Shown one piece after another: positions 3,383-30,961 of a stretch of DNA of 64,000 nucleotides. A program made the position numbers and the translations under genes. How positions within the stretch are numbered: the first letter of the stretch is position 1; every line of letters starts with the position of its first letter. The notes under the pieces are model-generated. The model was not told the origin of the DNA and searched no databases. It saw only the letters and a program-made list of their open reading frames with translations. Source of the DNA: Lepidodermella squamata (lineage: Eukaryota; Animalia; Gastrotricha); contig JBLDXI010000003.1 in the NCBI GenBank assembly GCA_047495785.1, forward strand, positions 992,001 through 1,056,000. Direction: 5' to 3'.

Positions 3383-6300
3383 TCACGTATGCTTTCCATT
3401 ATCAGCAAATGCACTGAATGGGCCATTCGACCCGCCCTGTATTGTTGGTTCTAGGTTGGCCCAATCCTCGGAATCATTATAACCATCTGCATTCCGATTA
3501 AAAGCTATTTCTTGAAAAGCCGGTGTCTGTACGGTTGTGTGAATTTGCATCTTATCCACAAACTCGATGCTCAACGATTGATCAAAGCCGTTAAAGCCGT
3601 TGTCGAGGGAGAACGTGGGTTCGACTGGGAAATTTGGAAAGCCGGCGATTCCATCGGGTGCGTTTGACTGCACGGGCTGGTGATCATCGCTAGCGCCAAG
3701 AAAGTTATTCGCTGATGAGCCATTTTCGTCGTCATCGCTGTCCGGCTGATTAGAATCCTCATTCTCAGCCATGAGCTCTTCTTCGTATTCCGCACTGACA
3801 GAATCTACAGTCATCCATCTTATAGATTTGTAATTCTCAGATCCTCTCGCTGCATAACTGTTCTTACTTCGATCAGAACTTTCCTTGTCGATTTCAGAAG
3901 TCAAATCTTTAACGCTTCGATTAGATGGCCAAAAGTACTTGAGGAAAGGAATATGCAAAATTGTGTATCCGAAAGTCGCACTGCCCATAGGTCGAAGCCA
4001 TTCGTTGTCCTTGTAAGTTTCCACTGTGACTACAGAGTCTCTTACAATGGTGTGACTAAAAACGCAGGATGGGTATAACAAAAACAAGGTAAATTATCAA
4101 TTCAAATTACGGTATAACAACTTGGCCACGTTCGCTTTGACTGAAGCGAGCCAGAAACTGAATTGAAATAAAATATTTAGAGTAACATGACGTAAAATTA
4201 TTGAATTTGCAACTGACCGTTCCAACACATTGCTTCACAAAGGCAGATTTACTATACGAGGGAGAAACAAATCCCGCGAATCCATCAGGCCAATAAGCTT
4301 TTAGCCAATCGGTGCATAGCAAATTCAAGGCATCATAGAACCATTCCCAAAAGCTGAAGGGTTTCTTGGGAGCTTTTTCAGGGTCAAAGTGTAGCTTCTC
4401 CCTTTTCACCAACATGTCCCAGCTGACAATTTCGTCGTCAAAGCAACGGCAAGAATCGTAAGGTAAGTCTTGCGGATGATCAGCGGAAGAAAAAAGACAT
4501 GGTGGACACGGCGTGGGGGCGAACATGCGTTCAGCCAAAAAGTGAACATTTTCTGGCTTCAGTCCGCTGCCAAGCCGATATGTCCAGAAACCATTCAAGA
4601 GACTTTTCACATCCTTCCATGAAGCGTCATTAGGTAGTGGAATTGGGTGCTGTCAAAGAATCGATAAAGAGTGTGATGTCTCATGCTCAATACTTATAAT
4701 TTCTTACCTGAATGTCAAAGAACAGTCGCATGATGGAAGGTATGTCGATGGGGAGATAATCGATTGATTGCAACACGGCATATCTTGTGAGCATTGTGTC
4801 TAGACGGATGTAGCTATCACTTTCGAGGCAAGAGCACATCCCACCCGAGTTAGTCGAATTCAATGGGCAAGGCACGAAAGGCTGGTCGGCGACCTGCATC
4901 GCCAGATAATGCCAGGTATCCTCAGTCAGCGGCTCTCGTCCAAGGCTACTCGAAGCGGCCGCAACGCATTGTTTGACATCTTTCCACTGGGCAACATTCA
5001 GACGTATGGGACTCTGTTGGGTTAAATAATCATAATTGGGCAAGATTCAAACGCCTGATAACGTACTATAGCAGAAAAATAGTTGCTCCATGCCACAGCG
5101 ATTTCGGAATTGGCTCTTTGAATGAAATTGGACGTTACAGAAATGGGAAGCGACACTGTACTGATGCTCCACGGCTCGGGAAAATGTTGCCATATAAAAA
5201 TTGGCAACTGTGAAGAGAGCGAAAACTGGATGCGCACCTTTTCCTCCACAACAGAATGTCCATCAGCCACCATTTGATTGTCTCCTAATTTTCGCTTGGC
5301 ACCTTTTTCCAGGCTTTCTATCCTCAGAAATTCAATTGCAGCCACGCAGTGGCCTAATGATGAAAGAGAAATTAATTTTAAATAATGCCCTAAAGTTTCT
5401 GCCCACCGGTCTCCGGTTTATAGACGAGCTCCATTGTTGTGCTTGGGTTAACCGTAAGGTGTGATGTTGGCAGCCAATCGTTGTCGTTTACTAGTTTGAT
5501 GCTAACCTTGAGGTTTTCTGCTTTTATCAACTGTTCAGCTACAGTTTTAGATTTTCTTTTCGGACGTGATGCACACGATGGAGAAGATTTGATGCCCAGC
5601 TGCTGTCTTGCATTTCGAAACATCTGGTACGAAGAGTCTAGCTGTAGATCGATCTTTAATTAACGAGAGCTAATTAAAATCTTCAAAAACATCCGAATTA
5701 TTACCGGAAATCGAGGAAGTGGCAAGAGAAAAGACGGTGAGCCGGCATATTTTTCGAATTCAGGGCGGAATATAACCGAAGGGCAGAGTAATCGAACTGT
5801 CGGAGCTGCAAAACGCGAGCCTGTTCTAGTAGTTTGAGAATGCCAGTTGGTAGCAAAGCCATTTTTCAAGAAAAAATCCGAGAAAATATGTTGGCATGTC
5901 ACGGCAAGTGCCCGCAATCGAGGGCCGAAATGCGGATCTCCCCATGCAGCTTTTGAGGCGAATTGAAACCTTGCTATATCTCTCTCCAATATTTGAGCAG
6001 CGGCGTCGTAAGCGCCTTGCAGATGGTCTAAATCAGTAGTTGGTACGATGCCGAATGAAATTTCAATTTTCTGACGTTCGAACAGTTTCATGTAGGCTGA
6101 AATGCTAGAAATCGTCCGTTGCACTGAAGGCATGTATTGCTCAGTTGCTGCATACAGATGCTGAGACATTGGGGGAACCGATCCTAAATTAGGTTGTAAG
6201 GCATCGGCAAGGCAGTAACTGGCGTGGCGCAGGGCATCAACGGCTGTTTCGAAGTTTTCGAATTTGATCTCAGGAGCTAAACGATCAGCAGCTCTGATTA

Positions 6301-6818
6301 AATGAGGTATTATTTGGCTTTGGAAAAACAGCTCGCTCTCATTTAGAAGTTGAATTTTCAACTTTATGAAGAAATCCATCGCCCCTTGAAGACTCAAAGC
6401 CTGAGGAAAAGACAAGGGTAATAGGTTAGTTTCGTATCTTAGGATGTCTACCGAAAGCTGGTCGACGCGATTCGAGCCATTCCTGCGCAGGACCTGGATT
6501 GCATCAGCTAGGAAATGGCGCACCTAAAACAGAATTTAATTGCACATATCACTGAGCGGTTGAAGACTCTTTTACGTCACTGTTGCACGGAAAAGCACCA
6601 TTGAATAGCAGCCTAAAAGGTAACGATAAGGTAGCTCTTTAGTATTTCATTTTTGGAGAATTGTCTCACCATGAGGTGCTGGTGGAGCTAATCCAGTCAG
6701 CTAAATCTAGCCGACGTTGCCAATCACCGCTTATCTCGTAAACTTGACTGATTAATAAGCCTTCAGCGCTGGAGTCTTGCTGAAGCCACAATTCCAATTG
6801 GGACTTACTCAGAGGCAT
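3383..6818 (-). CDS. STAT: Divergent STAT transcription factor, paralogue 1 (multi-exon)
   Basis: ATG 6818 (MPLSKSQLELW..RLDLADWI, N-domain); coiled coil; DBD VVEEK..TVSLPISVTSNFIQ..AWSNYFS; linker FSFWEWF; SH2 GFVS..FLARFSQSERG; tail Tyr in ENYKS; acidic C-terminus. Confidence 0.85.
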
Positions 6819-13724: not shown

Positions 13725-14631
13725 CTAGCAATAAATAATTGAGGATGATTCATCTAGGTCACCCTGCAAACCCGGACTAGTATTATCTCTCTCCAATATT
13801 TGAGCAGCGGCATAATATGCGCCTTGCAGATGGTCTAAATCAGCGGTTGGTACGATGCCGGAAGAAATTTCAATTTTTTGACGTTCGAACAGTTTCATAT
13901 AGGCTGTAATGCTGCAGATTGTCCGGTGCACCAAAGGCATGTATTGTCCGGTTGCTGCCATCAGCTGCTGAGTCATTGGACGAACCGATCCTAATGGCAC
14001 ATTGGGTTCGATGGCATTAGCAAGGCGACAGCTGGCGCGACCTAGCGCATCAACGGCTGTTTCGAAATTTTCGAATTGGACCTCTGGAGCTGCACCATCT
14101 ACATCTCTGATTAAATGAGGTCTTATTAGGCTCTCGAAATACAGATTGCTCTCTTTTAGAAGTTGGCTGTTCAATTTGCTGAGGAACGCCAGCGCCCCTT
14201 GCTCGTCCAAAGCCTGAAAAATACGTGGGTAATACATTGTTTCCGTATTTTATCGAAGGTTTTCTACCGAAAGCTGGTCTACGCGATCCGAGCCATTCCT
14301 GTGCAAGACCTCGATTGCATCGTCTAGGAAATGACGTACCTAAAACAGACTGATTGCACACAGCATTGACTGGTGGGAGATTCTCTTACCTCATGGTAGC
14401 GCAGAATGTCACTATAGAACAACAGCCTTAAGTAACAATAAGGTAACGCTTTCAGTTTTCCATTTTCAGAGATATGTCTCACCATGAGGTGCTGGTGGAG
14501 CTAATCCAGTCAGCTAAAGCTATTCGACGGTGCAACTCCTCGCTACTCTCATAAACTTGGTCGATTAATAAACCTTCAGTGCTGGTATTTCGCTGAAGCC
14601 ACCATTCCAATTGGGACTTGCTCAGAGGCAT
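13725..14631 (-). pseudogene. STAT: 3'-truncated STAT paralogue 2 (N-domain plus coiled coil only)
   Basis: Highly similar to 26847-27694. Homology stops at ~13783 after QILERD; the frame then reads ~19 unrelated codons to a stop at 13725. Confidence 0.8.
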
Positions 14632-24111: not shown

Positions 24112-27100
24112 TCAAGACAGTCCATCGTACTTCTGCACTCCATTAGTAGCAAATGCACTGAATGGGCCATTCCAGCCGGCCGGTAATGTTGGTTCTAGGC
24201 CTGCCCAATCCTCGGCATCATTATAATCATCTGCATTCCGATTGAAAGCTATTTCTTGAAAAGCCGGTGTCTGTACGGTTGTGTGAATTTGCATCTTATC
24301 CACAAACGCGCTTATCAACGATAGATCAAAGCCGTTAATACTGTTGTCAGGAAACAAAGTGGATTCGCCTGAGAAATTCGAAAAACCGCCTATACCATCG
24401 GTGGCGTTTGGCTGCAAGGGCTGATGATCCTCGCTGGCGCCATGAAAGTTATTCGCTGATGAGCCATTTTCGTCGTCATCGCTGTCCGGCTGATTGGAAT
24501 CCTCATTCTCGGCCATGAGCTCTTCTTCGTATTCCGCACTGACAGAATCTACAGCCATCCATCTTATAGATTTGTAATTCTCAGATCCTCTCGCTGCATA
24601 ACTGTTCTTACTTCGATCAGCTCTTTCCTTGTCGATTTCAGCAGTCAAATCTTTAACGCTTCGATTAGATGGCCAAAAGTACTTGAGGAAAGGAATACGC
24701 AAAATTGTGTATCCGAAAGTTGCACTGCCCATAGGTCGAAGCCATTCGTTGTCCTTGTAAGTTTCCACTGTGACTACAGAGTCTCTTACAATGGTGTGAC
24801 TAAAAACGCAGGATGGGTATAACAAAAACAAGGTAAATTATCAATTCAAATTACGGTATAACAACTTGGCCACGTTCGCTTTGACTGAAGCGAGCCAGAA
24901 ACTGAATTGAAATAAAATATTTAGAGTAACATGACGGACAATTATTGAATTTGCAACTGACCGTTCCAACACGTTTCTTCACAAAGGCAGATTTACTATA
25001 CGAGTGAGAAACAAATCCCGCGAATCCATCAGGCCAATAAGCTTTCAGCCAATCGGTGCATAGCAAATTCAAGGCATCATAGAACCATGCCCAAAAGCTG
25101 AAGGGTTCCTTGGGAGCTTTTCCAGCGTCAAAGTAAAGCTTCCCACTTTTCACCAACATGTCCCAGCTAATGATTTCGTCGTCAAAGCAAAGGCAAGAAT
25201 CGTAAGGTAAATCTTGCGGATGATTAGCGGCAGAAAAAGGGCATGGTGGACACGGCGTGGGTGCGAACATACGTTCAGCCAAAAAGTGTATATTTTCTGG
25301 CTTCAGTCCGCTGCCAAGCCGATATGTCCAGAACCCATTCAAGAGACGTTTCACATCCTTCCACGAAGCCTCATTAGGTAGCGGGATAGGTTGCTGTCAA
25401 AGAATTCAAAAAGAGTACAATATCTGATGAACAATTTCATTATAATATTACCTGAATGTCAAAGAAGATTCGCATGATGGTAGGCATGCAGAATGGGAGA
25501 AAATCGTTTGACTGCAACATTTCATATCTCGAAAGAATTGTATCTAAACGGACGTAACTATCGTTTTCGAAGCAGGAACACTTCACACCCGAGTGAGTTG
25601 AGTTCAATGGACATGATCTCATAGGTTGGTTGGCGACCTGTATCGCTAAATAATGCCAGGTAGCCTCTGTCAGCGGTTCTCGTCCAAGGCTACTCCAAGC
25701 GGCCTCAACGCTGTGTTTGACTTCTTTCCACTTGGCAACATTCAACCGTAAGGGACTCTGATAGTTAGATTATTAGGGCAGGTAAGATTAAAATGCCTGA
25801 CAACGTACATTTGCTGCAAAATAATTGCCCCAAGCCACAGCGATATCAGCATCAATTCGCTGACTGGGATGCACTATTAGAGAAATAGGTAGCGATACTG
25901 TGCTGATACTCCACGGCTCTGGGAATTGTTGCCATATGAAAATTGGCAGTTGTGAAGAGAATGAAAACTGGAGGCACAGCTTTTTCTCAACAACAGAATG
26001 TCCATCTTTAGCCGCCATTTGGTCGCCTTCCAATTTTCGCTTGGCACCTTTTTTCTTCTTTCCATCCTCCGTCTTTTCTATTCGAAGATATTCAACTGCA
26101 GCCACGCAGTGACCTAATGATGAGAGGCAAACAAATGAATTCATAACGAGGATGAAACATTCCTACCGGTTTCCGGTTTGTAGACAAGAACAGTTTCCAT
26201 TTTAGTGACGAAGTTGTTCACTTCCACCTTAAATTGCGATGTTGGCAGCCGATCGTCGTCGTTTACCAGGTTGATGATAACCTTGACGTTTTCTGCTTTT
26301 ATCCATGGTTCTACTTCAGCTTTAGCTTGCTTTGCCGGGCGTGACGCAACACTTTCTGCGTCATCGCTCTCAGGCAAAACTGATGTGTTTGTCTTATCGT
26401 AGTTGGCCGGCAAGAAACGCGCATTACGCTCGATAGAACAGGCTTTGATGCCGAGCTGACGCCATGCGTTTTGAAGAAACTGGTACGAAGAGTCTAGCAA
26501 CTGTAGATCGATCTGTAATTAACGAGAGCTTATTGACAATTCTTTAACAGCTTCACAATTATTACCGGAAATCGGGGAACTGGCAGGAGAAAAGACGGTG
26601 TTTTACCGCCGGCATGTTTTACCGATTGTGGACGGAAAATGACCGACGGGCAGAGTAATCGAACTGACGGAGCTGGAAAACGGGCGGCGCTCGTTCTAGC
26701 TATTTGAGGATGCCAGTTGGTGACAAGGCCATTTTTCACAAAGAAATCGATGAAAATATGCTGGCACGTGACGGCTAGCGCCTGCAATTTTCGGCCAAAG
26801 TTTTGGTCCATCCATGCGACTTGAGCGGCGAAGTGGAGTCTTGCTACATCTCTCTCCAATATTTGAGCAGCGGCATCATATGCGCCCTGAAGATGGTCTA
26901 AATCAGTGGTTGGTACCCTGCCAAATGAAATTTCAATTTTTTGACGTTCGAACAGTCTCATGTAGGCTGTAATGCTACAGATTGTCCGGTGCACGAAAGG
27001 CATGTATTGTCGGGTTGCTGCCATCAGCTGCTGAGTTATTGGATGAACCGACCCTAATGGCACATTGGGTTCGATGGCATTAGCAAGGCGACAGCTGGCG

Positions 27101-27694
27101 CGACCTAGCGCATCAACGGCTGTTTCGAAGTTTTCGAATTGGACCTCTGGAGCTGCACCATCTACATCTCTGATTAAATGAGGTCTTATTAGGCTCTCGA
27201 AATACAGATTGCTCTCTTTTAGAAGTTGGCTTTTTAACTTGCTGAGGAACGTCAACGCCCCTTGCTCATCCAAAGCCTGAAAAAAGACATGGGTAATACT
27301 TTTTTTTCGTATAGATCTCAGGTTTACTACCGAAAGCTGGTCAACGTATTTCGAGCCATTCCTGTGCAAGACCTCAATTGCATCGTTTAGGAAATGACGC
27401 ACCTAAAACAGACTGATTGCACACTGCATTGACTGGTGGGAGATTCTCTTACCTCATGGTAGCACAGAATATCACCATAGAACAACAGCCTTAAGTAACA
27501 ATAAGGTAACGCTTTCAGTTTTCCATTTTTAGAGAAATGTCTCACCATGAGCTGCTGGTGGAGCTAATCCAGTCAGCTAAAGCTATTCGACGTTGCAACT
27601 CCCCGCTACTCTCATAAACTATGTCAATTAATAAACCTTCAGTGCTGGTATTTTGCTGAAGCCACCATTCCAATTGTGACTTGTTCAGAGGCAT
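24112..27694 (-). CDS. STAT: Divergent STAT paralogue 3 (multi-exon)
   Basis: Same exon structure as paralogue 1; DBD TVSLPISLIVHPSQ..AWGNYFA; SH2 FLARFS; tail Tyr in ENYKS. Confidence 0.87.
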
Positions 27695-28195: not shown

Positions 28196-30961
28196 TCATT
28201 GCATTTCGTTATCGCTGGTGTCGCTTTCGTCAACGCCTATCCAGCGCAGTGGCTTGTAACCTTCCTCGCCCTGTGGCTTGGGGTTAATCGTTACTAAGTT
28301 GAGGCTGAGAACTCTTGTTAGGATATCCTTTTTCGGGTACATAGATGGCCACCAGCATTCTAGCGGCTTGACATCGATGATTCTCTGTGCAAAAAGTTTG
28401 ACATCCTGGCTAGGTTGGATAGTACGATCCTTGAATGCCTTTACCAGTAAGACATTATTCGATGAAAGCATGCAATACCTAAGGCCGAAAGGATATTAAA
28501 CAGATCATGTTTGATGTAATTTCTTACGGAAAGGCGATTTGCCCCAAGTCATTCAGGCTAAATCTAAGAACAAACTACAGAGAAATATATAGTTAACAGT
28601 TAAAATGAGATAAAAACACGACTCACAGCGCCCGGGTGGCTATGAACCAAAGCACTCTCGCAATACTGCTGGGAAACAAATCCCAACAGCAATTCAGGCC
28701 AGAAAGGCTTCAGCAATGGACTACTGACTAGTTTGACGTAGGAAAAAAACCATTCCCAAAAACTAAATTTGAGCAAATCTGGTTGTCTTGGCTTGGCATT
28801 CGAACCTTGGTGAGGTCTCGCCTTCAACCTGTCCTTAGTTAGCTTTTTCCACGAGACAGCTACGCTGTCGTAACAGCTGCATGCTGAAGCATTTAAATTG
28901 GTATTAGCGAACGCAAATGGGCAAGACTGGCGCTCTTCCCCAAACAGCCGCTCAGCCAGCAGATGGATATTCTCAGGCTTCAGTCCAGAACCACAAGCCC
29001 AGTTCCAGTAGCTATTAAGCATGCATTTCACGTCCCGCCAGTAGGCAGTTTCAGGAACACGAAAGGACGGGGAGCGTGCCTACAAATCAAAAAATCGAAA
29101 AAAATCCTTTAAAATCTATAGTCTCTCTTACGATCTTGGAAAAATAGTTATCCCATAAGATCGTCACAGTTGCATTTGAAATCTGATTGTTATGCACAGT
29201 TACAACGATTGGCAAAGATAAGGTTCTCGCGAGTGCACGGCTATTTGGATTGGACGATGGGTTGGGTTGCGGCAGGAAAACTTCAGACAACGCTATGGTA
29301 CTCTCGAACACTAGGCAAATCTTTTCTTCAACAACTCGATGCTGAGTTCTCGCGCTTGCGCTTGTTGATGCTTCACTACCAGATGTAGCGCGTTCCCGTT
29401 TGTAGTTCTTCAAGTAAAGCTTATCCAAAGCTGCAACACAACGGTTTTTGGCAGGGTGGTATACCCAGTTGGAGGTTTTGATGTGCTGTCCTCTAGTCGA
29501 GTTTTCATCTTTTGAGACCGTTGATTCGTCGCAATAGTAAACTTGCACATTAGCATTCGTTGCCATGATCCATTTTTCCCCGTTTCCAGCATTCCGCTTC
29601 GCTGACGAAGCCATCCTCCGCAAAGGTTGACTAGCATTTGAGGACGAGGCTGAGTTTAAGCTCAATTCTAGGACACCCTGAGCTGACTCTTTTTTAGCAA
29701 GAAACTCGCAATCTAGCTTGAAATTTGCTTCGACGAATTGAGAAGTAATCAAATTTGAGTGATGAACTCCTAAACTCCTGGTGGTGTAACTTGTAACACC
29801 TTCGTCAATCTGAGAAAATAGAACAGTGCAAATAATTCTAATCAGGTTGTAATCGCAATCAAATTACGGAAGATATTGGCCATTGAAAAAGCGGACCGAG
29901 CTCAAGCTGTGATAAAGAGCTGGCATAGTACTGATGCAAGAGGTTTTCACGGCAAAAGATCAAGCTAGGGCATAGCATCCGAACGACAGGTGTGATGGAA
30001 AAACGACACTTATTTTCAGAAGATATCTTGCGAACAATTTGTGCCATCTGCTCCTCCAGAAGCATGCACTTGTTCACCAAGAAGTTCCTTAGAAAATCAA
30101 GTAGCACGTTAATTAGATCCCTCAAGGAAGCAGCCATTTCCGCTAAGTTGTGATCCGCGGCAAAGTGTAGCCCCAGTTCCAGCCTTGGCAAGGTTTTCGA
30201 GACGGTCTGGGCTACAGCGTCATAAGCCCCTTGCAAATGATCAGCGCTAGTCGTTACTAGCTCAGCGAAGGTCAAACGTGCTATTTGCCTATTAAATAGG
30301 TGCATATAGTTTGTGAATGTCGTGCGGCATGCCGAGATAGCAAGCTTCATGTCCTCCGCGCAAGTTGTAATTCCTATCCTGATGCGGTCAAGGCTACTAG
30401 CGTCGAAGAATCGGCCGCCCATGGTGATATCGCTGAGAACTACAGCAACGTGGAAGCTGGATTGGACAAAGCTTTCCGTCGCATTTTCAAAGTTCGTATC
30501 AGTGAAGGCTCTCATTGGTTCATCAACAGCGGATAGGAAGCTTGGATTCACAAAATACTTATCGTACTCATTGCTTTCAATTAGCAGACAGTGGCGTAAG
30601 GCTGTCAGGTAAGAAGAGGATTTCGTTTCATCAGCCAGCAAGTTCTTGAGTGAAATAACCAATTTTGTTTCGAAATTAAAAATTATTTAGGTCAATTTAC
30701 CTCGAATGATCGAATGATAGAGTAATGTCTCGAATTGTTCTCATCACCAGATAGAAAGTTGATCGCCCTCTGAATCACAGTCCTTGACTGTGAAACTGTC
30801 TGCCCACTGATTCTAAACCAGTTATCGCCATGAATAGTGATCCAAGGTGCGAGAGCTATCCTAGGCTCCAAATTTAGCCCATTCTGTGCGTATATACCTT
30901 CCAACACATGTTTGTTTGAGCTATTGTGCCATAAATTCAATTGAAAGCCGTCGATAGGCAT
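28196..30961 (-). CDS. STAT: STAT paralogue 4, most canonical (STAT5/6-like DBD), very short C-tail
   Basis: ATG 30961; DBD VVEEKICLVFES..TLSLPIVVTVHNNQISNATVTILWDNYFS; FSFWEWF; SH2 GFVSQQ..FVLRFSLNDLG; GYKP phosphotyrosine-type motif. Confidence 0.92.

What the first reader, a model, noticed from the sequence alone, without database searches (positions are those of the whole stretch)
25452..25757. STATs with a duplicated linker domain on an extra symmetric exon
Paralogues 3 (25452-25757) and 1 (4708-5013) each have a 306-nt phase 0-0 exon between DBD and linker. It repeats the next exon's pattern: WK(D/E)VK..L...HYLA..CP..CSC..D....(S/T)IMR.FFD versus WKDVK..L...HFLA..CP..SC.C.D...SFW.WFYD. 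Paralogue 4 has a single linker. A 102-aa second linker would change SH2-to-DBD geometry and possibly half-site spacing, and the exon could be skipped in frame. I know no STAT with this architecture.
Basis: partly seen in the sequence, partly recalled or inferred. Interest (0 to 1): 0.82.

Follow-up and report, generated by a model that had tools for sequence, protein, structure and literature searches.

The report
STAT genes with duplicated linker exon
Two neighbouring STAT signalling genes of a small invertebrate (probably a gastrotrich) carry an extra, conserved coding exon that is an old, diverged copy of the STAT linker domain, so the proteins should have two linker modules between the DNA-binding and SH2 domains, an arrangement I found in no other STAT.

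Summary
The genes lie on the minus strand. Paralogues p3 (25452-25757) and p1 (4708-5013) each have an open 306-nt, phase 0-0 exon (E6) with AG/GT splice sites. It sits between the last DNA-binding-domain exon and the linker/SH2 exon (E7).

- **Homology:** E6 aligns along its whole length with the first ~107 residues of E7. Local-alignment z is 6-9.6 against shuffles, and hhalign gives probability 94.5%, E 7.8e-8. E6 shares a His + 3 Cys motif specific to this gene cluster.
- **Insertion:** against p4 and 16 full-length STATs, E6 is a clean 102-residue insertion at the DBD|linker boundary. p4 has only a 51-nt intron there.
- **Selection:** p1 versus p3 gives dN/dS 0.34 for E6, like the other exons.
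- **RNA:** one contig joins E5 to E6 at the predicted acceptor, and all 26 sampled words of p1's E6 are in the same RNA run. The E6-E7 junction and any skipped isoform were not seen, so how often the exon is included is open.
- **Fold:** support for a linker fold is weak (pLDDT 66, STAT1 linker Z 3.8).
- **Elsewhere:** among 105 hits from 1.84 billion representatives, only two sturgeon assembly artefacts show two linkers.

Effects on geometry or half-site spacing remain untested speculation. The scan had noted the STAT array, not this exon, on this same window.

The parts
25452..25757 (-). p3 exon E6: the extra 306-nt, phase 0-0 exon (102 aa), a diverged partial copy of the linker exon
   Evidence: Open frame. 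AG/GT sites. RNA joint 25757>25809. hhalign against the window's linkers, probability 94.5%. dN/dS 0.34.
25758..25808 (-). 51-nt intron between the DBD exon E5 and E6
   Evidence: Spliced out in an X1 RNA contig, ends CT..AC on the plus strand, which is GT..AG on the minus strand.
25394..25451 (-). 58-nt intron between E6 and E7, predicted and not seen in RNA
   Evidence: GTAATA donor and TTTGACAG acceptor restore the frame. No joint was recovered.
24962..25393 (-). p3 exon E7: canonical linker domain plus the start of SH2 (144 aa)
   Evidence: Pfam STAT_linker 37 bits, E 4.5e-9. AlphaFold pLDDT 80, matching STAT6 at Z 8.8 and STAT1 at Z 8.4. Its donor is confirmed by the joint 24901>24962.
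25809..26113 (-). p3 exon E5: C-terminal half of the DNA-binding domain, ending ...AVAWGNYFAAN
   Evidence: Joints 26111>26165 and 25757>25809. Weak STAT_bind match. Alignment to 16 STATs.
24112..27694 (-). Whole p3 gene, 9 exons, 1048 aa: N-terminal region, coiled coil, DBD, E6, linker, SH2, tail
   Evidence: Model built. Five of its eight introns are confirmed by RNA joints.
4708..5013 (-). p1 exon E6, the orthologous extra exon (70.6% aa identity to p3's E6)
   Evidence: 26 of 26 sampled words are present in RNA run X1.
4218..4649 (-). p1 exon E7: canonical linker plus the start of SH2
   Evidence: 87-88% aa identity to p3's E7.
3383..6818 (-). Whole p1 gene, 9 exons, 998 aa, all splice sites GT..AG
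   Evidence: Exon boundaries mapped from p3 through a genomic alignment.
28627..29079 (-). p4 linker exon, the only linker copy in p4
   Evidence: Pfam STAT_linker 46.8 bits. Gene model and junction.
28196..30961 (-). Whole p4 gene, 6 exons, 832 aa: a single-linker STAT with a 51-nt intron where p1 and p3 carry E6
13785..14631 (-). p2: a 5' STAT fragment (residues 1-247, 86-88% identical to p3) with no DBD, linker or SH2
   Evidence: tblastn of p3 against the window.

Best explanation
In the common ancestor of p1 and p3, a tandem duplication copied the 5' two-thirds of the linker exon together with its acceptor. A GT inside the copied coding sequence became the new donor. The result is a new 306-nt, phase 0-0 exon (E6) between the DBD exon and the original linker exon. 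E6 then diverged quickly and has since been kept as coding sequence in both genes. When spliced in, it gives STATs of about 1000 aa with two linker-type modules in a row. The first module (L') is attached to the DBD as in every STAT. It keeps the strand and helix with W-K-D/E-V-K, the H-Y-L-A helix, the His/Cys3 loop and a shortened last helix, but has lost the FxFWxWF aromatic motif. The second module (L) is the original linker. It keeps that motif and runs into the SH2 domain. Shown: the exon structure, its homology to the linker, purifying selection, and use of the E6 acceptor in RNA. Inferred: that L' folds as a linker-like helical module, that it is included in most transcripts, and that it lengthens or re-angles the arm between the DBD and SH2.
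For: - **Structure:** open frames and canonical splice sites in both genes.
- **Homology:** collinear alignment with 14 invariant columns, including a His + 3 Cys motif found only in this cluster's linkers. Shuffle z 6-9.6. hhalign probability 94.5%, E 7.8e-8. hhalign against 14 unrelated database STAT linkers, E 6.7e-4 on columns 8-46. Pfam STAT_linker E 0.017 on the same stretch of p3's E6.
- **Insertion:** in a full-length alignment with p4 and 16 STATs, E6 is a clean 102-residue insertion at the DBD|linker boundary.
- **Selection:** dN/dS between p1 and p3 is 0.34 for E6 (dS 0.46). Fisher p = 3e-4 for fewer non-synonymous than synonymous changes per site. Other exons give 0.25-0.49.
- **RNA:** an X1 contig joins 25809 to 25757 with GT..AG ends, and all 26 sampled words of p1's E6 are in X1. 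X1 is RNA-derived, since it shows five intron-skipping joints and no depth over the 25394-25451 intron.
- **Origin:** the ML tree places E6 as sister to E7 of p1/p3, with p4 outside and an E6 stem of 2.4 substitutions per site. Read through the donor, E6 continues as FFDIQ-VIL*, which echoes WFYDALNLL of E7.
- **Fold:** the predicted secondary structure of E6 (E-H-H-h-E-H-H) is collinear with that of E7. All three STAT entries seen among the representative PDB chains match the E6 model in their linker regions, at ranks 2, 26 and 30 of 48,161. The best TM-by-query match in the ESM Atlas is an SH2 + STAT_linker cluster.
Against: - The E6-to-E7 junction was not recovered in RNA. X1 depth over p3's E6 is 0-6 against 15-45 on the neighbouring exons, so inclusion may be partial.
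- The fold evidence is weak and partly circular. The model has pLDDT 65.6 and its alignment contained real linkers. Foldseek found nothing. Z of 3.0-3.8 is within the background of EF-hand-like helical hits.
- Pfam finds nothing in p1's E6.
- The tree node that places the duplication after the p4 split has only 59% bootstrap support.
- There is no protein-level or functional evidence of any kind.
Confidence: 0.72

Rival explanations
1. E6 is a cassette exon. Both genes make a canonical single-linker STAT (E5-E7) and a longer double-linker isoform (E5-E6-E7), and the ratio is regulated. The extra module then works as a switch on STAT activity or target choice, not as a fixed part of the protein.
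For: The phase is 0-0, so skipping keeps the frame and gives exactly the p4-type junction. X1 depth over p3's E6 is much lower than over the flanking exons, and its last 70 nt have no depth. Exons born by tandem duplication often start out as alternative exons (general knowledge).
Against: No E5-E7 joint (25809>25393) was reported. The reference-allele contig runs from E5 into E6. p1's E6 is fully covered in the RNA run. Contig depth cannot rank parts of a gene, and X1 differs from the reference by many SNPs at a 95% alignment threshold. Flanking introns of 51 and 58 nt are typical constitutive introns here.
Confidence: 0.22
2. E6 is a non-functional relic: a pseudo-exon inside a long DBD-linker intron, spliced in only occasionally as noise, with no role in the protein.
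For: The copy is truncated, has lost the aromatic FxFWxWF motif, is highly diverged (stem of 2.4 substitutions per site) and is barely recognised by Pfam.
Against: Both copies keep 102 open codons, about 0.75% chance each, after dS of 0.46. dN/dS is 0.34 with Fisher p = 3e-4. Both keep good splice sites. The linker-defining residues and the His/Cys3 motif are invariant. Without E6 the intron would be 415 nt in a gene whose other introns are 50-60 nt.
Confidence: 0.04
3. E6 and E7 are mutually exclusive alternative exons, the common fate of tandem exon duplicates, giving two STAT isoforms with different linkers.
For: They are adjacent, homologous, both phase 0-0 exons.
Against: They are not interchangeable. 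E6 has 102 codons and ends inside the last linker helix. E7 has 144 codons and carries the rest of that helix and the first ~40 residues of SH2 (WPDGFAGFVS...VGT). An E6-only isoform would therefore lack part of SH2. The 58-nt intron between them is a normal size for this genome, so nothing sterically prevents joint inclusion.
Confidence: 0.02

Closest known systems
Canonical metazoan STATs (e.g. STAT1, STAT5, STAT6; PDB 1yvl, 6mbw, 4y5u)
   Same: Same domain order around the site: the end of the DBD (SLP-VV..H..Q...A.I.W.N.F), a linker (Pfam STAT_linker above threshold for E7 and for p4), and SH2 with GTFLxRFS. The E7 model superposes on the STAT6 and STAT1 linker + SH2 start at Z 8.8 and 8.4.
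   Different: p1 and p3 carry an extra 102-residue linker-like module between the DBD and the linker. All three window STATs have a Cys-rich loop (His + 3 Cys) inside the linker that 14 database STATs lack. The N-terminal and coiled-coil regions are too diverged for Pfam.
Paralogue p4 in the same array (28196-30961)
   Same: Same family, same Cys-rich linker loop, and the same phase-0 intron position at the DBD|linker boundary.
   Different: Single linker with only a 51-nt intron where E6 sits, no intron inside the DBD, and a short C-terminal tail.
Acipenser sinensis predicted STATs MGH0147658.1 and MGH0156063.1 (P0023, P0035)
   Same: They are the only database hits with two linker matches in one protein.
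   Different: P0023 contains a perfectly identical 99-residue repeat (DBD end + linker start). P0035 contains two complete linker-SH2 units. Both are flagged UNVERIFIED_CONTAM in a draft assembly. I read them as assembly or gene-model artefacts, not as old diverged duplications.
Internal domain gain by tandem exon duplication (general mechanism)
   Same: Adjacent homologous exons of the same phase, with the upstream copy inheriting the acceptor context. The new exon is symmetric, so it can be included or skipped.
   Different: The duplicate is partial and uses a donor recruited inside former coding sequence. The two copies are not interchangeable, unlike classic mutually exclusive exon pairs.

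Membership tests
STAT transcription factors (whole genes p1, p3, p4) | Linker domain (Pfam PF21354 STAT_linker) above the curated cut-off | tested here: met
   p3 E7 scores 37 bits and the p4 linker 46.8 bits against a cut-off of 27. A PDB sequence search with the profile returns only STATs at E<0.2; the sole non-STAT row is at E 0.94.
STAT transcription factors (whole genes p1, p3, p4) | STAT DNA-binding domain (PF02864) | tested here: inconclusive
   p4 scores 29.2-29.7 bits against a cut-off of 27, so it is met for p4. p3's E5 scores only 12.6-13.6 bits. The alignment with 16 STATs nevertheless shows the conserved end of the DBD in p1 and p3.
STAT transcription factors (whole genes p1, p3, p4) | SH2 domain with the phosphotyrosine-binding Arg in GTFLLRFS | tested here: met
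   The spliced models read VGTFLARFSQSE (p1, p3) and PGAFVLRFSLND (p4), aligned with GTFLLRFSDSE of 16 STATs. The E7/E8 and E8/E9 junctions are confirmed by RNA joints. Pfam SH2 could not be scored because the domain is split over three exons.
STAT transcription factors (whole genes p1, p3, p4) | C-terminal activating tyrosine | not testable with these tools
   Candidate sites by position only: GSENYKSIRW (p1, p3) and GEEGYKPLRW (p4).
STAT transcription factors (whole genes p1, p3, p4) | N-terminal STAT_int and coiled-coil STAT_alpha domains | tested here: not met
   No Pfam match at E up to 10 for the N-terminal and coiled-coil exons. The word search with the coiled-coil exon found nothing. 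The regions are present and of the right length, but too diverged to score.
STAT linker domain (the extra exon E6 itself) | Sequence match to the family profile | tested here: inconclusive
   Pfam STAT_linker gives 16 bits, E 0.017, below the cut-off of 27, for p3's E6, and nothing for p1's E6. hhalign against 14 database linkers gives E 6.7e-4 but probability 27%. hhalign against this genome's own linkers gives probability 94.5%, E 7.8e-8.
STAT linker domain (the extra exon E6 itself) | Linker (EF-hand-like helical) fold | tested here: inconclusive
   The model has pLDDT 65.6 and linker-like secondary structure. Foldseek found nothing. VIA-align gives STAT1 475-563 at Z 3.8, Dictyostelium STAT at Z 3.1 and STAT6 at Z 3.0, all in their linker regions but within the background. 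The Atlas best TM-by-query is 0.51, to an SH2 + STAT_linker cluster. The E7 control reaches Z 8.8.
STAT linker domain (the extra exon E6 itself) | Complete domain, including the FxFWxWF last helix that leads into SH2 | tested here: not met
   E6 ends at P-[TS]-I-M-R-[IL]-F-F-D-I-Q. The tryptophans are replaced and the helix is cut short.
Cassette (alternatively skipped) exon | Both inclusion and skipping junctions observed in RNA | tested here: inconclusive
   An inclusion junction (E5-E6) was seen. No skipping junction and no E6-E7 junction were seen, and only contigs of one RNA run were available.

The most novel reading that the evidence does not exclude
p1 and p3 encode STATs whose arm between the DNA-binding domain and the SH2 dimerisation clamp is lengthened by a second folded, possibly zinc-stabilised (His/Cys3) linker module. 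Their dimers would then read half-sites at a different spacing or angle from p4 and all known STATs. In-frame skipping of the symmetric exon would let one gene switch between the two geometries.
Probability: 0.15. Interest if true: 0.75.

Novelty: new variant of a known kind. Interest (0 to 1): 0.48.

Why it matters
The STAT domain order (coiled coil, DBD, linker, SH2) is regarded as fixed from slime moulds to mammals. The rigid linker couples SH2-mediated dimerisation to DNA binding. A naturally retained second linker module between the DBD and the linker is therefore a natural experiment on how much that coupling tolerates. If the long isoform binds DNA, it could show how arm length sets half-site spacing. 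It is also a clear and datable example of a protein domain gained by partial exon duplication with a donor recruited inside coding sequence. The limits are plain: it occurs in one obscure lineage, nothing functional is known, and the same exon could turn out to be a minor isoform.

Tried and rejected
- **Plus-strand reading:** full of stops, because the genes are on the minus strand.
- **Word search:** the coiled-coil exon found no relatives. The length window also excluded full-length STATs.
- **Stretch counts:** in the exhaustive profile search I hoped the number of matched stretches would flag double-linker STATs. Most hits show two stretches only because the variable loop splits the profile. 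I re-scanned the 105 hits locally for two N-terminal-part matches. P0051, with nine weak repeats, is a bacterial repeat protein and a false positive.
- **Searches that found nothing:** Foldseek against the PDB and the ESM Atlas feature search.
- **Spliced region not folded:** I could not fold DBD-E6-E7-SH2 as one chain. It has no single reference, and I did not type long sequences.
- The second run search gave only word coverage for p1's E6.
- **Artefact from amplification:** I considered an assembly artefact from multiple displacement amplification (the method of the probable source assembly, PMC11660948) and rejected it. E6 and E7 are only ~27% identical, and p1 and p3 differ by ~25% at the nucleotide level upstream of E7.
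- **Literature:** three searches found no report of a STAT with two linkers.

Full report
**What is at the coordinates**

The plus strand of 25452-25757 and of 4708-5013 is full of stops. The minus strand is open for 102 codons in both. The window holds a tandem array of STAT-like genes on the minus strand. tblastn of the p3 pieces finds three relatives:
- a full paralogue at about 3383-6818 (p1);
- a full but more distant one at 28196-30961 (p4);
- a 5' fragment at 13785-14631 (p2, residues 1-247 only).

**Gene models**

I built the p3 model from splice signals and RNA joints. It has nine exons: 27694-27546, 27489-27453, 27402-26566, 26512-26167, 26113-25809, 25757-25452, 25393-24962, 24901-24855 and 24799-24112. 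It encodes 1048 aa.

Mapping these boundaries onto p1 through a genomic alignment gives nine exons with GT..AG at every intron and an intact 998-aa frame. p4 has six exons and 832 aa. Introns are 50-60 nt throughout.

The finding's exon (E6) is flanked by a 51-nt intron (25758-25808) and a 58-nt intron (25394-25451). It begins and ends on whole codons, so skipping it would stay in frame.

**RNA evidence**

Two public runs hold the locus.
- **X1** is RNA-derived. Its contigs skip five introns of p3 with GT..AG ends (24800-24854, 24902-24961, 25758-25808, about 26114-26166 and about 27403-27452). It has no depth over the 25394-25451 intron.
- **X2** behaves as DNA. It may be the sample the assembly came from.

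The joint 25757>25809 shows that the E6 acceptor is used and joined to the DBD exon.

No joint was recovered for the E6 donor, and none for E5-E7 skipping. X1 depth over p3's E6 is 0-6 against 15-45 on the neighbouring exons. These are contigs from a sample with many SNPs against the reference, so depth cannot be used quantitatively.

For p1, all 26 sampled 31-mers of E6 are present in X1. So E6 is transcribed and spliced at least at its 5' side. The level of inclusion is unresolved.

**Is E6 a copy of the linker?**

- **Alignment:** the two E6 copies, the two E7 exons and the p4 linker align collinearly over all 102 residues. The 14 invariant columns include W11, V14, K15, L30, H36, L38, A39, C51, C67, C69 and F104 in E7 numbering.
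- **Chance:** local alignment scores exceed shuffles by z 6.2-9.6.
- **Profiles:** hhalign of E6 against the window's three ordinary linkers gives probability 94.5%, E 7.8e-8 over 77 columns. Against 14 linkers of unrelated database STATs it still picks the equivalent helices (columns 8-46 to 12-50), but with E 6.7e-4 and probability only 27%.
- **Pfam:** STAT_linker matches the same stretch of p3's E6 at E 0.017, below its cut-off. It does not match p1's E6 at all.
- **Full length:** aligned with p4 and 16 full-length STATs, E6 is a clean insertion at the DBD|linker boundary.
- **Extent of the copy:** it is partial. It ends at ...IMR(I/L)FFDIQ, opposite ...FWxWFYDAL of E7. It therefore lacks the rest of the last linker helix and has lost the aromatic FxFWxWF motif. 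Read through the donor, it continues VIL*, echoing NLL of E7. That fits a donor recruited inside duplicated coding sequence.
- **Shared loop:** the Cys-rich loop with an invariant His and three Cys is present in all five copies of this cluster. It is absent from the 14 database linkers. This ties E6 to a duplication within this lineage.
- **Tree:** an ML tree places E6 as sister to E7 of p1/p3 with p4 outside, but with only 59% bootstrap. The E6 stem is very long, at 2.4 substitutions per site.

**Selection**

Between p1 and p3, E6 has dS 0.46, dN 0.158 and dN/dS 0.34, within the range of the other exons (0.25-0.49). Non-synonymous changes per site are significantly rarer than synonymous ones (Fisher p = 3e-4). 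Two independent 102-codon open frames with preserved splice sites, after that much synonymous divergence, argue strongly that E6 is translated.

**Fold**

With a 19-sequence alignment that includes real linkers, so the test is partly circular, AlphaFold gives E6 pLDDT 65.6. Its secondary structure is strand-helix-helix-(short helix)-strand-helix-helix. This is collinear with the E7 model, which has pLDDT 80.3.

Foldseek finds nothing for E6. VIA-align over 48,161 representative chains ranks STAT1 (residues 475-563, Z 3.8, 68 aligned) second, Dictyostelium STAT 26th and STAT6 30th. All three align in their linker regions, but within a background of EF-hand-like helical hits. The best TM-by-query match in the ESM Atlas (0.51) is an SH2 + STAT_linker cluster.

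As a control, the E7 model hits the same three STAT entries at Z 8.8, 8.4 and 5.9, well above background. The fold evidence is therefore compatible with a degenerate linker module, but it does not prove one.

**Is the architecture known?**

A profile of the five linker copies was scored against 1.84 billion representative proteins. It found 105 hits, the best at only 61 bits. So neither this species nor close relatives are in that library.

I re-scanned the hits for two linker N-terminal matches. Only two Acipenser sinensis predictions qualified. One carries a perfectly identical 99-residue repeat and the other two complete linker-SH2 units. Both are flagged UNVERIFIED_CONTAM, and I regard them as artefacts.

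Three literature searches found no report of a two-linker STAT. The search is limited, because a profile from such a diverged lineage reaches only a small fraction of all STATs. The claim is therefore 'none found', not 'none exists'.

**Organism**

The published assembly (122 Mb, 157 contigs, 43% GC; PMC11660948) fits the scan's tally of pieces and the window's ~42-43% GC. I did not verify the identity by sequence.

**Mechanism and verdict**

The most likely history has four steps:
1. A partial tandem duplication of the linker exon in the p1/p3 ancestor.
2. Recruitment of an internal GT as the new donor.
3. Fast divergence of the new copy.
4. Retention under purifying selection in both daughter genes.

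The protein should then read DBD - L' (E6) - L (E7) - SH2. L' keeps the canonical connection to the DBD, and L keeps the canonical connection to SH2.

Whether L' extends the arm, bulges out as a side module or is used only in a subset of transcripts cannot be decided here.

I rate this a real, new variant of a known family. It is of moderate interest until inclusion and function are shown.

Noticed in passing
window 24450-25350 (p3) versus about 3700-4600 (p1): Nucleotide identity between p1 and p3 jumps from ~0.75 upstream to 0.92-1.00 from the start of E7 through most of E9, introns included. dS is 0.17 for E7 against 0.42-0.66 for E1 and E3-E6 (the 12-codon E2 gives 0.32). This looks like a gene-conversion tract that homogenises the linker-SH2-tail half, and its boundary sits at the E6|E7 intron.
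   Followed up: partly
window 25393-24962, 4649-4218, 29079-28627, 25757-25452, 5013-4708 (all minus strand): All five linker copies share an invariant His and three Cys (H36, C51, C67, C69 in E7 numbering) in a loop that 14 database STAT linkers lack. This is a candidate lineage-specific zinc site inside the STAT linker.
   Followed up: no
window 13785-14631 (-): 'Paralogue 2' is only a 5' fragment: exons 1-2 and the first 185 codons of exon 3, 86-88% identical to p3. No DBD, linker or SH2 was detectable downstream, so it is a truncated duplicate or pseudogene.
   Followed up: partly
window 26499-26501: Contigs of both runs (X1 RNA, X2 DNA) lack three bases here (GTT on the minus strand, one Leu codon at the start of p3 exon 4), as does p1. 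It is an in-frame indel allele or a small assembly difference.
   Followed up: partly
window 25713/25862 and 26862/26974: X1 contigs show two 'opposite strands' joints inside p3. These are probably hairpin artefacts of contig assembly rather than biology.
   Followed up: no
database proteins P0023 and P0035 (Acipenser sinensis MGH0147658.1, MGH0156063.1): Sturgeon STAT predictions with an exact 99-residue internal repeat (DBD end + linker start), or with two linker-SH2 units. Both are flagged UNVERIFIED_CONTAM and are likely assembly or gene-model artefacts that mimic a double linker.
   Followed up: partly
window 29132-29809 (p4) versus 26114-26166 (p3) and 5354-5406 (p1): p1 and p3 have an intron inside the DNA-binding domain that p4 lacks. 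p4 also ends shortly after the candidate tyrosine (…EGYKPLRWIGVDESDTSDNEMQ*), whereas p1 and p3 have acidic tails of roughly 200 residues (about 170 in p1, 220 in p3).
   Followed up: no
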